Shown: piece by piece, positions 37,725 to 44,988 of the stretch
How the letters are laid out: every line of letters begins with the position of its first letter
Numbering within the stretch: position 1 is the stretch's first letter
DNA from: Trichoplax adhaerens
Lineage: Eukaryota; Animalia; Placozoa
Reading direction: 5' to 3'
DNA length: 64,000 nucleotides
Assembly (NCBI RefSeq): GCF_000150275.1
Contig: NW_002060946.1
Location: forward strand, 4,297,454-4,361,453
Notes under the pieces: generated by a model
What the model was told of the DNA's origin: nothing
What the model saw: the letters and a program-made list of their open reading frames with translations, nothing else
Databases searched by the model: none
Translations under genes and position numbers: made by a program

Positions 37725-40700
37725 TTATATATTCGTAGCAGGATTTATAGATCTCTCCTTGATACGCTCGCACTTCATACAATTCGTCTTTCTTATGCAA
37801 ACTCTGTTTAGATTCGGTATGATTGATTAATAATTTTTCTGGAAATTTAAAGGTAAACAGTAGAATAATGTATAAAGTATTAACTTACTTGTGATACACA
37901 GACGAACATTTTTCACAGACTTCGGCGTTTAAGTCGAAAGGAAAAAGCAACTCAGAACTTTTACAAATTTCGCAATAAAACCCTTTCGCTGCGCAAAGCT
38001 AGCGGAGAAATAGATGAGATACGCTCAATTATTCTATAAAAGATATACCTTAAAAGATAATGCTATCAATAGGCACCAATTTCCATTAATTTTAAAGCAG
38101 TGTCTAAGTCATTATTAACATTAGGTCAGTTCCGTAAAGCGGCAGGGATGCCGGTAAACTTTTGCAAATAGTGTATATAAGACTTACTTCGCAGTTTTCT
38201 TTTACGTGCTTAATTAAATCTTGAGAAATACTTCTAAGTTCCTCTATCAAAGTTCCATCATTAATTTTTATCAAATCTTGCATAGAGTACATATCGACAT
38301 TATCCATTAAATGAAGCTTGATCTTTAGCTGTATAACATACAATAACAACCATTAATACCATATATTATGCACAAGCGAAAACCAGGCAAGGTTCATGAT
38401 TTATTGTATGTTATTAATTTAAAAAGAATGAAAGATATACCTTTGCAAACGAATTGTGTTGTTGTGCCGATTTGCATGAATGTACATAGAGCCGTAAATT
38501 AGATAGCGTCATACGCAAATTCTAAATATAGTAATTGCGATACCAAATATTAATAAATATTTTATAGCAAAGTAAGACTATTAAGGATTCAGCGATATTA
38601 AACATACCTTTACAGTTACCAAATCGTCAATATGACTAAAAAGGTTAGCATTAATACTTTCTAAAGGTATAACTGGGTGATTAGATAGCAGCTCCAACAT
38701 GTTACTACAGCGTTGACAAACCTTTTGATGGATTACAAATTGTGATAGTACTTTAATTGCAATATATTAATCTCTAAGTACAATAGCTAAACTCACTGTT
38801 CTTGTACTGAAATCCCAATTGCGAATAACTCTAGCCGGAATTACAGTTTGTTCATTCTTATGACAGTTTGAACAATGATATCGCCCTTGGTAATCACAAA
38901 TTCGAGCTTCAGGCAGTACTTGTTTAGACTTTTTGTTTGCTATATTCAAGATGAAATTCACGAATTATCATTTTGGTTAGAAAGTAAAGATTCTCCACTT
39001 ATATACACTAGTATATATTTAAATAAAGTGTCACGATAAGCAATTCAAACCTAGTCCAATAAATCTTCTACAGTCTGCACATCGGTGTTGTTGCGATGAA
39101 AGTCCAATTTCAGGGCGAATAGTCATTATAAATACAGTTTGGGGAGTCTGTTGGAACGTGCAATTGTTAATATTGTTCTTTAATAATATTTAAAACAACA
39201 TTTTCCTATGATTATCATTATTTTATATTGGATTTAGTACTCAAGGTAATACATATAGCAAGGCATTTAGTAGCCTAAGCATATGCTAAAACATCACATT
39301 AAATGACTACTTTAGGCTAGCTTAAAAGAAAGTTAAGTCCCTTTGTTTGTCGTAGATAAATTATGTTATACTGAACAGCGTATCTATAAATGCAGCTGGA
39401 AACTTACATACTATGGATGTAACATGTGCTGCTACAATAAAGTATCGATTCCTGCATATATTATACCTTGTACGTCTGGCACATTTTACTAATAGATTCT
39501 TTGCACTTCAGGTGAGTAAATAAATCACATACTGTGGTAATTTTGGAGAATAATTGATAACAGAATTAAGCATGAAAATGATGAAATAGATTTTAAGACA
39601 GAATTTTTGTCCAATACAAAATTTTATGAGTTATAAATAAAATTAGTAGCCTTCATACCACTACACTTGTAAAACGTTTGGATAGTGCACCAAATACGGC
39701 GATGGCAAACATTACAATACAGTCTTAATAGCGAGTCGTGGGTCATAATCTTGACAAGTTGATGTCCAGAAGAAGAAGTCGTGAAATTAGGAGTCCAATC
39801 AGTGGATGACTCCTAGTCAGAATAAATAAAGACGTTATGGTTGTGGTCTAAATTAAGCATTTATCGTCGTGGCATATACAATAAATACCAGCGTACGAAG
39901 CACATGCATTGTTAACCTTAATTTCTTGAAGTCGGATTCTTAGGCTAACTAAAGTCTCTTTAAGGTCATTATTAGATCCATAAGATAGTGCAAGCAGCTT
40001 TTTACAGGTTCGAATTGCCATTACTAGGTCCGCAATATCACAATCGGTAAAGTAAGCCTGAATTAGAAATACATGACAAAGTTTAGGCATGCTGGAAATT
40101 TACTGCCTAGAGAGGTATCATCAAGCATCGAAAAAGAGTACATTAAGACACACCGGTGGAGGTTGATAATCTTCTTCTTTCAGAATATATTCAATCAGTG
40201 ATTCGAATTCTGATTCGTTAAAAACTGTTGAATTCTTACATGACTTTCGATGGTAACTTAAATTCCAAAGAAGATAATTTTCGATCCTATCGTTATTTTG
40301 AGTGATATCGGAACTAGAGTAGGCTTGGGCTTCAGAATCAGATTTGGATTCAACTCCGCTATTTAATTTCATGCTATCGCTATTTTCTCGATAGTTTAGC
40401 TTTTCTTGAGTAGTATCGTTATTTTCTTTCATTAAAACAGAGCTATTAGCAGTCAGGTTACTACCTTGAGAATTTATATTACATTCGAAGTCTTTGCTAT
40501 CTTCGTCGCTTTGTATAAAGAACATATCCGATCCTTTTACATCAGTAACCCATTTATCGCTTTCACGAGAACTGCTATCGACTATAGAGGTAGTTTTTGC
40601 CAAATACTCACTTTTTTCTTGTAATATGTTATCAGCACTAATATTTGAATCCTTGCCTATATCTTCCATGCTGTAGCTGCTTAGATGCTTAGCTAGATGT

Positions 40701-43700: not shown

Positions 43701-44988
43701 ATATGCAATGCATATAACCAATTAAATTCCGATAATTATCTAAAGTAGCAACCTAGCTAATAATATTACCTTGCTTTGAGCCCATGACATAAGATGTTAT
43801 AAAAACAATTGCATAGTTCTTCGGCTTCAGGTCGGTTTTTCATTTCATTGTTGCTCGACATGGAGCGGTAGTTATCGTAATGGGATTGTTCATACTTATG
43901 CAAGGGATATAGGTTTTATTATTAATTTTTGTTGAAAGATTTATTAGTAATAGATCAAAATATTTTCATCAAATTGTTTTAACCATGGTTAATATAATAC
44001 TGTACATGATAGACAGTGTACAAATTTGGACTAAACAAGGGATTACGATACCATCATATATACGGATAGATATAACGTATATTTGCGTGTATCATCTGTG
44101 AAGAATGTGCCTTTTTCGTTTTATATCTACTTTACAATTAATTACTACTAGTCCTGCAACTCGTTGCTTTGTTATTTCTTAGGTGATAACATAATTTGTA
44201 ATAGTATGTTGAATCATATTTCATGAATAGGAGTAAGCTGCACAAGTAATTTTTTAATAATAATGTCCGATTTTTCCTTTACCTTAGCAATTGCATCGTT
44301 TAGTGTCTGAAAGAGCTGTTTATAATCTTCATATCGTTCTTGGTCGGTAGGTATTGCAGCTGTAAGATGAAACGTAGTTTATACAATAATACTGCCAATC
44401 ATTCATTCACACCGTTCAACATGAATAATATAGAGTGCTGTACAGTATATATACGTATGTATGTTGGAGATGTAAAAATTGACTAAGCTGGCTTGCTACT
44501 ATTGCTAATGAAAGCGGCTATCATTACATGCCATACTCTATTTTACATTGCATACCGTATATACTCGTAATGAGGTATTTTTAATCTTGATTTCATTACA
44601 GTATACTGTACTGTATAGCGGCTCATTACAGAAAATTGTCTGTCATTAATTAATTATATATTATAATAGGGCTAAATTATAATATGGTATAGCAATAATT
44701 TGCAAATAAATTATCAATTAATAGCTATTACTATAGCTACCGCTAGTTTATATGGCCTCGATTGATTTTACAATATTGGTTCCATAGACATACTCGTACA
44801 ATAATATAAAAGAGCGTTACTCTACTCGTATACAGTATATATATACATGGTACAGTAGTAATGTTATAAATTATGTTATTCGTTATAATTGCCGTAGCGA
44901 CGTTGATTAAATACACATATACATGCTTGATACTCTATCTTGGTACTTTACCTTGACTGCTTTTAAGCAATGAGCTTAAACGATTCAT
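37725..44988 (-). CDS. DEF8: DEF8-like protein (C1 + Rubicon-homology domain) with two N-terminal RUN domains (21 exons, ~1254 aa)
   Basis: Exons 44952-44988, 44283-44359, 43770-43894, 43495-43569, 43166-43282, 42956-43051, 42763-42857, 42385-42458, 42160-42281, 41672-42060, 40154-41586, 39917-40057, 39659-39812, 39467-39531, 39051-39147, 38797-38939, 38608-38721, 38441-38521, 38188-38328, 37889-37998, 37725-37803; all GT-AG, 3765 nt open. The C-terminal part follows DEF8: AIRTCKKL...[74 protein letters not shown]. Confidence 0.85.

What the first reader, a model, noticed from the sequence alone, without database searches (positions are those of the whole stretch)
37725..44988. DEF8 fused to N-terminal RUN domains: a possible one-polypeptide PLEKHM1/DEF8 lysosome adaptor
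Seen: one continuous spliced frame (21 exons, all phases compatible) gives RUN - RUN - ~480 aa Ser-rich linker - coiled segment - C1 - Rubicon-homology domain. Known: vertebrate DEF8 has C1 + RH but no RUN; PLEKHM1 has RUN-PH-PH-RH; Rubicon has one RUN + RH; DEF8 and PLEKHM1 act together with Rab7 in lysosome positioning. The C-terminus here is DEF8-type, and the RUNs have PLEKHM1-like features (FW...SH...I, WxRLALNE). No PH domain was recognised. Inference: an architecture I do not know from any described family member, either ancestral or a lineage-specific fusion that could bind Arl8/HOPS and Rab7 in one chain.
Basis: partly seen in the sequence, partly recalled or inferred. Interest (0 to 1): 0.8.

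Follow-up and report, generated by a model that had tools for sequence, protein, structure and literature searches.

The report
DEF8 gene with ancestral RUN domains
This is one real, expressed gene: this animal's version of the lysosome-trafficking protein DEF8, still carrying an N-terminal RUN domain (here duplicated) that corals, a sea anemone, a sponge and choanoflagellates also have and bilaterian animals have lost, so the design is ancestral and not a new fusion.

Summary
On the minus strand, 44988-37725, 21 exons (20 GT..AG introns, 3,765 coding nt) encode RUN - RUN - 477-aa Ser-rich exon - helical segment - C1 - RH. One 4,879-nt RNA contig joins exon 1 to exon 15 and runs on into exon 16.

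The C-terminus is DEF8-type:
- Exons e12-e21 lie in order on positions 76-447 of a 455-position DEF8 profile.
- They score 239.5 bits against DEF8 and 169.3 against PLEKHM1.
- They keep 27 of 29 DEF8-conserved Cys/His, including all eight C1 ligands.

The architecture is not new. Acropora, Montipora, Stylophora, Nematostella, the sponge Sycon and two choanoflagellates encode RUN(-C1)-RH proteins on the DEF8 side of the RH tree. RefSeq already holds them under inconsistent names. The Nematostella gene shares all nine DEF8-part introns, the giant linker exon and the three RUN introns. The "ancestral" reading is supported and "lineage-specific fusion" is rejected.

What is specific here is the tandem RUN. 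RUN2 is older than the split from a related organism, is under constraint (dN/dS about 0.09), has lost two introns, and has changed two of the four basic residues PLEKHM1 needs for Arl8b.

Arl8 and Rab7 binding are inferred. I built no joined protein model.

The parts
44952..44988 (-). Exon 1: start codon at 44988, 12 codons plus 1 nt. The transcript contig begins about 88 nt upstream.
   Evidence: Sequence; joint 44359/44952 in X4 and X9; an in-frame stop lies upstream of the ATG
44283..44359 (-). Exon 2: N-terminal lead-in to RUN1
   Evidence: Joints; phases
42956..43894 (-). RUN1 domain, exons e03-e06 (43894-43770, 43569-43495, 43282-43166, 43051-42956). Its three internal introns sit at the same positions as in the Nematostella RUN. 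At the four positions PLEKHM1 needs for Arl8b it has H, R, K, R.
   Evidence: Pfam RUN 35.3 bits on e05; RUN HMM mapping; PDB best hits are the PLEKHM2 and PLEKHM1 RUN domains; residue mapping
42385..42857 (-). Inter-RUN linker, exons e07 (42857-42763) and e08 (42458-42385)
   Evidence: Joints; no domain match; e08 is 67% identical in the related organism's contig and e07 was not found there
41672..42281 (-). RUN2 domain, exons e09 (42281-42160) and e10 (42060-41672). e10 equals e04+e05+e06 fused, so two introns were lost. At the four Arl8b-critical positions it has D, R, Y, R. It is under purifying selection.
   Evidence: Pfam RUN 47.9 bits; PDB PLEKHM1 RUN 8jc5, E 3.9e-6; HMM coordinates; dN/dS 0.09 and 0.03 against L016
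40154..41586 (-). Exon 11: 477-aa Ser/Thr/Asn-rich linker, probably disordered, with no detectable domain. It corresponds to the 399-aa giant exon of the Nematostella gene.
   Evidence: both flanking joints seen in X10, X4 and X9
40196..40216 (-). LIR-like motif ESEFESL at the end of the linker. This is a pattern match only.
   Evidence: Regex search; not tested further
39917..40057 (-). It aligns to DEF8 profile positions 79-125.
   Evidence: 14.8 bits on the full-length bilaterian DEF8 HMM, with the same exon span as Nematostella exon 8
39467..39812 (-). C1 (DEF8-type) zinc finger, exons e13 (39812-39659) and e14 (39531-39467). All 8 ligands (H, C, C, C, C, H, C, C) are kept.
   Evidence: joints in X4 and X9
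37725..39147 (-). Rubicon-homology (RH) domain, exons e15-e21 (39147-39051, 38939-38797, 38721-38608, 38521-38441, 38328-38188, 37998-37889, 37803-37725), with the stop at 37727-37725
   Evidence: Pfam RH_dom on four pieces; DEF8 HMM preferred over PLEKHM1 HMM; every Cys/His column shared by both clades is kept; intron positions identical to Nematostella

Best explanation
The locus is a single expressed gene: the DEF8 orthologue of this (apparently non-bilaterian) animal. It keeps the ancestral long form of DEF8, which is an N-terminal RUN domain, a long disordered Ser-rich linker, and then the complete DEF8 module (helical segment, C1 zinc finger, RH domain). In this lineage the RUN domain was duplicated in tandem. 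RUN1 keeps the ancestral introns and the basic residues PLEKHM1 uses to bind Arl8b. RUN2 lost two introns and changed two of those four residues, but is held under purifying selection.

Shown: the transcript, the domain content, DEF8-clade membership, the same architecture and exon structure in cnidarians, and constraint on RUN2.

Inferred: the RH domain, with its four zinc clusters, binds Rab7-GTP on late endosomes and lysosomes as in Rubicon and PLEKHM1. RUN1 binds an Arl8-type GTPase, and perhaps HOPS through it. One chain would then bridge two GTPase-marked membranes or states, a job that vertebrates split between RUN-less DEF8 and PLEKHM1. RUN2 probably has a diverged partner or a structural role.
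For: Single transcript: 14 canonical joints and one 4,879-nt contig through e1-e15 that continues into e16. The key joints appear in three runs from three studies.

Gene model: 20 GT..AG introns and no stops.

Domains: Pfam RUN twice and RH_dom.

DEF8 membership:
- e12-e21 score 239.5 bits against the DEF8 HMM and 169.3 against the PLEKHM1 HMM; 8 of 10 exons favour DEF8; held-out controls separate correctly.
- The exons are collinear with positions 76-447 of a 455-position full-length DEF8 profile.
- 27 of 29 DEF8-conserved Cys/His are kept, including the 8 C1 ligands that protostome PLEKHM1 lacks.
- Median single-sequence scores rank DEF8 above both Rubicon and PLEKHM1 on all three RH exons compared.
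- It is the only DEF8-type RH locus of the three in the genome.

Ancestral architecture:
- Sycon, Acropora, Montipora, Stylophora and Nematostella proteins combine one RUN with a full DEF8 region and sit inside metazoan DEF8 (100/98 support).
- Choanoflagellate RUN-C1-RH proteins join the DEF8 side (100/99).
- 9 of 9 DEF8-part introns, the 3' boundary of the giant exon and 3 of 3 RUN introns are shared with Nematostella.
- All 17 bilaterian DEF8 sequences checked lack RUN.

RUN2: it is present in the same order in a related organism's genomic contig, with dN/dS about 0.03-0.09.

Functional residues: using PMC5379943. RH zinc clusters and Rab7 binding: PMC7382272.
Against: - No binding was tested. 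Arl8, HOPS and Rab7 interactions are extrapolated from vertebrate PLEKHM1 and Rubicon.
- The DEF8-over-PLEKHM1 margin (70 bits) is smaller than for sponge and cnidarian DEF8 (about 180 bits), so the protein is divergent.
- Two DEF8-conserved Cys/His are changed (C->R in e15, H->R in e16).
- Junctions e16-e21 were not covered by the laid reads.
- Contigs cannot exclude additional shorter isoforms. RefSeq predicts RUN-less X2 isoforms for corals.
- The placement of H60 is an inference; the frog ruler was off by one residue.
Confidence: 0.82

Rival explanations
1. It is the PLEKHM1 orthologue, of the protostome type (RUN + RH without PH), and not DEF8.
For: The RUN exons' best solved relatives are the PLEKHM1 and PLEKHM2 RUN domains. 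Protostome PLEKHM1 has the same RUN+RH Pfam content. RefSeq names some coral orthologues 'PLEKHM1-like'.
Against: The RH/C1 exons favour the DEF8 HMM by 70 bits, and the controls behave correctly. A DEF8-type C1 with all 8 ligands is present, which protostome PLEKHM1 lacks. e12 matches the DEF8 segment before C1. The coral and Nematostella orthologues sit inside DEF8 at 100/98 support. The intron structure matches the Nematostella DEF8-clade gene. Both RUNs score higher on the DEF8-type RUN HMM. Another locus (C1401) is the PLEKHM1-leaning one.
Confidence: 0.07
2. It is a lineage-specific fusion: a RUN-domain gene recently joined to a short bilaterian-type DEF8 gene in this lineage.
For: Every bilaterian DEF8 examined lacks RUN, so seen from vertebrates the gene looks like a fusion. 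The RUN2 exon has only one close relative in 1.84 billion representatives.
Against: The same architecture is found in corals, Nematostella, Sycon and choanoflagellates. Exon-intron structure is shared with Nematostella across the RUN, the giant linker exon and the DEF8 part.
Confidence: 0.04
3. It is two adjacent genes (a RUN-RUN gene and a DEF8 gene) joined artificially by read-through or chimeric contigs.
For: Assembled contigs, unlike single long reads, can in principle merge neighbouring transcripts. Depth cannot be read from contigs.
Against: Spliced joints on both sides of e11 are present in three runs from three studies. One contig is continuous over 15 exons with an unbroken frame and no stop or start signal in between. 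Orthologues have the same one-gene layout.
Confidence: 0.03
4. It is a Rubicon orthologue (RUN - Ser-rich region - coiled coil - RH).
For: The overall order (RUN, long Ser-rich linker, helical segment, RH) resembles Rubicon. e16's only solved relative is the Rubicon RH domain, 6wcw, at 1e-9.
Against: Rubicon is the only RH domain in the PDB, so that hit does not discriminate. Like-for-like single-sequence scores favour DEF8 on e16, e19 and e20, and e19 does not hit Rubicon at all. A DEF8-type C1 and the DEF8 segment before C1 are present. Another locus (C1385) has an RH domain plus a faint RUN-like ORF and is a better Rubicon candidate. I had no set of Rubicon sequences for an HMM test.
Confidence: 0.02

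Closest known systems
Cnidarian long DEF8 proteins: Nematostella XP_048576655.1 (938 aa), Acropora XP_074618612.1, XP_044175827.1 and XP_015756425.1 (954 aa), Montipora XP_068725658.1 (956 aa), Stylophora XP_022790013.1 (960 aa)
   Same: N-terminal RUN, long linker encoded by one giant exon, and a complete DEF8 module (helical segment, C1, RH). Nine of nine DEF8-part introns and the three RUN introns sit at the same positions as in the Nematostella gene.
   Different: They have one RUN and the window gene has two. Their linker is shorter (about 400 aa against 477 aa plus an inter-RUN linker). The window protein is more divergent from the DEF8 consensus. RefSeq names them inconsistently (PLEKHM1-like, DEF8-like, uncharacterized).
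Sycon ciliatum 1,364-aa protein (EukProt name 'Differentially expressed in FDCP 8 homolog'; NCBI XP_065182933.1) and the choanoflagellate RUN-C1-RH proteins (Savillea parva 1,485 aa, Hartaetosiga balthica 1,233 aa)
   Same: RUN - long linker - C1 - RH. The Sycon C1+RH region is 44-49% identical to true DEF8 proteins. All fall on the DEF8 side of the RH tree.
   Different: Each has a single RUN. The choanoflagellate proteins branch outside metazoan DEF8.
Bilaterian DEF8 (vertebrates; Drosophila CG11534), about 400-520 aa
   Same: The window's e12-e21 are collinear with nearly the whole protein (profile positions 76-447 of 455). The C1 and RH zinc ligands are kept. DEF8 works with Rab7 and PLEKHM1 in lysosome positioning, as cited within PMC10564863.
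   Different: Bilaterian DEF8 has no RUN domain and no long linker.
PLEKHM1 (vertebrate RUN-PH-PH-C1/RH; protostome RUN+RH)
   Same: The RUN is of the same subtype (best PDB hits 8jc5 and 8jca). It combines RUN and RH in one chain. The block-D arginines that PLEKHM1 uses for Arl8b are largely kept in RUN1.
   Different: The RH falls in a separate, strongly supported clade. The window exons score lower on the PLEKHM1 HMM. No PH domains were found. The genome has a separate PLEKHM1-leaning RH locus.
Rubicon (RUN - Ser-rich/PIKBD - coiled coil - RH)
   Same: Similar overall order, and an RH domain built on four zinc clusters (PMC7382272).
   Different: The window gene has a DEF8-type C1 before the RH, and its RH exons score lower against Rubicon than against DEF8. 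I could not search for a Rubicon PI3K-binding region.

Membership tests
DEF8 | RH domain that groups with DEF8 and not with PLEKHM1 or Rubicon | tested here: met
   Exon by exon: 239.5 bits against the DEF8 HMM and 169.3 against the PLEKHM1 HMM, with 8 of 10 exons favouring DEF8 and controls correct. Median single-sequence scores rank DEF8 above both Rubicon and PLEKHM1.
DEF8 | DEF8-type C1 zinc finger directly N-terminal of the RH domain | tested here: met
   All 8 C1 ligand columns (H, C, C, C, C, H, C, C) are kept in e13/e14, and these columns are gaps in protostome PLEKHM1. e13 and e14 score 18.3 and 7.5 bits on the DEF8 HMM against 2.1 and 0.7 on the PLEKHM1 HMM.
DEF8 | Collinearity with the whole DEF8 protein, including the conserved segment before C1 | tested here: met
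   e12-e21 map in order to positions 76-447 of a 455-position bilaterian DEF8 profile.
DEF8 | Gene structure shared with a DEF8-clade gene | tested here: met
   Nine of nine DEF8-part intron positions and the 3' boundary of the giant exon coincide with those of the Nematostella gene.
DEF8 | Short protein without RUN, as DEF8 is described in vertebrates and flies | tested here: not met
   The window gene has two RUN domains. However, the sponge and cnidarian members of the DEF8 clade also carry RUN. Absence of RUN therefore describes bilaterian DEF8 only and does not define the clade.
DEF8 | Binds Rab7 and PLEKHM1 | not testable with these tools
RH-domain proteins (Pfam PF13901) | Nine conserved Cys plus one His forming zinc clusters (PMC7382272) | tested here: met
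   Every Cys/His column conserved in both the DEF8 and PLEKHM1 clades is kept. Overall 27 of 29 DEF8-conserved columns are kept. Pfam RH_dom scores 54.8, 41.0 and 44.0 bits on single exon pieces, against a cut-off of 28.1.
RUN domain (Pfam PF02759) | Match above the gathering score, twice | tested here: met
   RUN1 scores 35.3 bits on e05 alone and RUN2 scores 47.9 bits, against a cut-off of 22. Both map to the same RUN HMM positions.
PLEKHM1 | RH domain in the PLEKHM1 clade | tested here: not met
   The clade itself is well separated, at 100/99 support.
PLEKHM1 | Two PH domains between RUN and RH (vertebrate form) | tested here: not met
   No PH match at E<=1 in any exon piece. Protostome PLEKHM1 also lacks a Pfam PH match, so this test is weak. 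A divergent PH fold in e11 was not excluded by structure prediction.
PLEKHM1 | RUN residues needed for Arl8b binding (H60, R117, R119, R123) | tested here: inconclusive
   RUN1 has H, R, K, R and RUN2 has D, R, Y, R. The placement of H60 is inferred. Binding was not tested.
Rubicon | RH closest to Rubicon or Pacer, no C1, and a PI3K-binding middle region | tested here: not met
   A C1 is present. e19 does not hit the Rubicon RH at E<=10, and e16 and e20 score lower against it than against DEF8. The PI3K-binding region was not testable.

The most novel reading that the evidence does not exclude
DEF8 and PLEKHM1 descend from one pre-metazoan RUN-C1-RH adaptor that bound an Arl8-type GTPase and Rab7 in a single chain. 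Non-bilaterian DEF8, this gene included, still works that way. Bilaterian DEF8 lost its RUN and so came to depend on PLEKHM1. In this lineage the duplicated RUN2, with a remodelled GTPase-binding face but under strong constraint, recruits a second, different partner, making a three-handed lysosome adaptor.
Probability: 0.3. Interest if true: 0.55.

Novelty: new variant of a known kind. Interest (0 to 1): 0.35.

Why it matters
DEF8 is known from vertebrates and flies as a small C1+RH protein that acts with PLEKHM1 and Rab7 in lysosome positioning and autophagosome-lysosome fusion. This locus and its coral, sea-anemone, sponge and choanoflagellate counterparts show that the short form is derived. 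The older form carries its own PLEKHM1-type RUN domain.

That gives a simple evolutionary reason for the DEF8-PLEKHM1 partnership: they are paralogues, and one of them lost its Arl8-binding end. It also offers natural "full-length" DEF8 proteins for testing whether RUN and RH on one chain are enough for lysosome tethering or positioning.

It exposes inconsistent database naming of the long forms. The tandem RUN is a small lineage-specific addition. None of this changes the known biochemistry of the family, so the interest is moderate.

Tried and rejected
- The exhaustive search with the RUN2 exon found only one close relative, a 144-aa fragment. This organism's own spliced protein is not in the libraries, so I could use no stored full-length sequence.
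- That left out whole-protein Pfam, structure prediction, fold search, complex prediction and tree placement of the window protein. Exon-by-exon HMM scoring and intron-position comparison took their place.
- I looked for RUN domains next to the genome's other two RH loci. There is none at E<=0.01 and only a 10-bit RUN-like ORF upstream of C1385.
- Full-length PLEKHM1 queries matched those two loci only in the RH region, so their identities stay open.
- Literature searches for RUN-containing DEF8 in early-branching animals found nothing. One figure legend in PMC10564863 mentions a 'RUN domain', but the text describes only C1_DEF8 and RH.
- Mapping H60 by counting back from the arginine motif on frog PLEKHM1 landed one residue off the conserved His, so I treat it as an inference.
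- The PDB search with e19 gave no RH hit.
- I considered and rejected the two-gene, lineage-specific-fusion, PLEKHM1 and Rubicon readings; see the rivals.
- The organism is coded. The assembly size (105.6 Mb, 1,414 contigs, about 32% GC) reminds me of a published placozoan assembly, but that is memory and was not tested.
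Full report
**What is there.**
The window is AT-rich (about 32% GC) eukaryotic DNA. On the minus strand between 44988 and 37725 I traced 21 exons. All 20 introns are GT..AG, no exon has an in-frame stop, and the phases are compatible. The coding length is 3,765 nt, which is 1,254 codons plus the stop at 37727-37725.

**Expression and continuity.**
I laid contigs from four public runs, each from a different study, on 39000-44999.
- There are 14 joints with CT..AC ends on the + strand, which are canonical GT..AG introns on the minus strand.
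- One X9 contig of 4,879 nt runs through exons 1-15. Its loose end matches the first bases of exon 16.
- X4 has a 2,667-nt contig covering e1-e11.
- X6 holds unspliced, DNA-like pieces.

So the RUN exons, the long exon and the C1/RH exons are on one spliced RNA. Junctions e16-e21 lay outside the 6,000 bases I could lay. They rest on splice logic, on collinearity with DEF8 profiles, and on identical intron positions in Nematostella.

**Domains.**
I built and searched no joined protein. As a result there is no whole-protein Pfam scan, fold, complex prediction or tree placement for the window protein itself.
- RUN1: 35.3 bits on e05 alone (Pfam cut-off 22).
- RUN2: 47.9 bits on e10.
- RH_dom: 54.8, 24.3, 41.0 and 44.0 bits on four pieces.
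- The 477-aa exon 11 is 18.9% Ser and 67% polar or small residues. It has no domain match at E<=1, so no PH domain.

**Which family.**
- *RUN subtype.* The RUN exons' best solved relatives are the PLEKHM1 and PLEKHM2 RUN domains.
- *References.* The exhaustive search with the RUN2 exon, two word searches seeded with a sponge hit and one seeded with a PLEKHM1 gave reference sets. Protostome 'PLEKHM1' proteins are RUN+RH with no Pfam PH match, so RUN+RH alone is ordinary.
- *Tree.* A careful tree of the C-terminal 340 residues (39 proteins) separates a PLEKHM1 clade (100/99 support) from a DEF8 side (100/99), within which metazoan DEF8 has 100/98.
- *Clade HMMs.* With HMMs trained on those clades, window exons e12-e21 score 239.5 bits against DEF8 and 169.3 against PLEKHM1. 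Eight of ten exons favour DEF8. Held-out DEF8 and PLEKHM1 proteins, chopped into exon-sized pieces, sort correctly.
- *Collinearity.* The exons lie in order on positions 76-447 of a 455-position full-length bilaterian DEF8 profile, including the helical segment before C1.
- *Zinc ligands.* The window keeps 27 of 29 DEF8-conserved Cys/His columns. These include all eight C1 ligands, which protostome PLEKHM1 lacks, and every ligand column shared by both clades.
- *Rubicon.* On like-for-like single-sequence scores, DEF8 beats both Rubicon and PLEKHM1.
- *Other loci.* The genome (105.6 Mb) has three RH loci. The other two are not DEF8-type.

The C-terminal third is therefore a complete, if divergent, DEF8.

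**Is the architecture new?**
No.
- The RUN2 search hit a 1,364-aa Sycon ciliatum protein that EukProt calls 'DEF8 homolog' and that has RUN+C1+RH. It also hit two choanoflagellate RUN-C1-RH proteins.
- Sycon's C1+RH region is 44-49% identical to true DEF8 proteins over 97-99% of its length.
- Transcriptome-derived RUN+RH proteins of 954-971 aa mostly proved to be stony-coral proteins: four of the five clusters hold RefSeq members from Acropora, Montipora and Stylophora, and the fifth, of 971 aa, has none but groups with them. RefSeq names them 'PLEKHM1-like isoform X1', 'uncharacterized' or 'DEF8-like'. Nematostella has a 938-aa form.
- All of these carry one RUN plus a full DEF8 region and sit inside metazoan DEF8.
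- All 17 bilaterian DEF8 sequences I checked lack RUN.
- The Nematostella gene has the same layout as the window gene. Its small RUN exons have introns at the same profile positions as RUN1. It has one giant linker exon ending at profile position 76. It then has ten small exons whose nine introns coincide with those between e12 and e21.

I found no paper describing a RUN-bearing DEF8.

**What is specific here.**
The RUN is duplicated in tandem.
- e03 and e09 cover the same RUN profile positions and end in the same phase. e10 equals e04+e05+e06 fused.
- RUN1 shares all three introns with Nematostella, so RUN2 lost two. This agrees with an earlier scan note (s1-733017).
- The copies are only about 40% identical to each other.
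- A genomic contig from a related organism holds e06, e08, e09 and e10 in the same order. Its introns do not align, and dN/dS is 0.08, 0.03 and 0.09 for e06, e09 and e10.

So the duplication predates that split, and RUN2 is maintained by selection.

**How it probably works (inferred).**
- RH domains bind Rab7-GTP through a fold built on four zinc clusters (PMC7382272), and the ligands are intact here.
- The PLEKHM1 RUN domain binds Arl8b through H60, R117, R119 and R123 (PMC5379943). RUN1 has H, R, K, R at these positions, and RUN2 has D, R, Y, R (the H60 placement is inferred).
- The likeliest mechanism is a Rab7 effector that also binds an Arl8-type GTPase through RUN1, with a long flexible linker between the two ends. 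RUN2 would have a diverged role.
- A single LIR-like motif (ESEFESL) at the end of the linker is a pattern match only.
- The genome also has a PLEKHM1-leaning RH locus, so this gene need not replace PLEKHM1.

**Verdict.**
The gene is a DEF8 orthologue that keeps the ancestral RUN end. That form is already in public databases but poorly named and, as far as I could find, not discussed in the literature. The tandem RUN is the lineage-specific variation. Interest is moderate.

Noticed in passing
G000:C1401:1144400-1146600 (L012), minus strand: A second RH-domain gene in this genome. All 7 of its exon pieces favour the PLEKHM1 HMM (183.9 bits against 128.3 for DEF8). No RUN match was found within about 15 kb upstream, and PLEKHM1 queries match only its RH region. 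It may be a RUN-less PLEKHM1- or PLEKHM3-like gene.
   Followed up: partly
G000:C1385:421280-422480 (L011), minus strand; RUN-like ORF at L011 9301-9513: A third RH-domain gene, with the strongest Pfam RH hit in the genome (82.6 bits). It is ambiguous between the DEF8 and PLEKHM1 HMMs (132.6 against 156.9 bits). A faint RUN-like ORF (about 10 bits) lies about 4 kb upstream. It is a candidate Rubicon orthologue.
   Followed up: partly
window 44748-44895 (intron 1): An X10 contig (organism B) covers intron 1 unspliced and skips 146 bases with non-canonical TA..CG ends. This looks like an indel difference between strains or species within retained intron or DNA sequence, not a splice.
   Followed up: no
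window 40196-40216 (end of exon 11): A single LIR-like motif, ESEFESL (acidic residues followed by F-x-x-L), lies just before the DEF8 module. PLEKHM1 has a functional LIR, but here it is only a pattern match.
   Followed up: no
Coral proteins P0225 and P0240 against P0227 and P0239: RefSeq predicts shorter X2 isoforms (776-782 aa) of the coral RUN-DEF8 genes that begin downstream of the RUN domain. Acropora X2 shares 775 C-terminal residues with X1. RUN-less isoforms may therefore coexist with the long form.
   Followed up: partly
Database names of orthologues: The same orthologue group is named 'DEF8-like', 'PLEKHM1-like', 'uncharacterized' and, for Sycon in NCBI, 'nuclear pore complex protein DDB_G0274915-like'. 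A Schistocerca protein in the PLEKHM1 clade is named Rubicon.
   Followed up: no
P0002 (Diaphorina citri 'PLEKHM1', 820 aa): This protein also shows two RUN stretches (residues 11-203 and 207-305). It is either an independent tandem RUN duplication in the PLEKHM1 clade or a gene-model artefact.
   Followed up: no
P0172 (Lingula, 920 aa) and P0175 (Gigantopelta, 775 aa): These are bilaterian DEF8-clade proteins with N-terminal extensions of about 330-470 aa that contain no RUN match. I did not examine what the extensions are.
   Followed up: no
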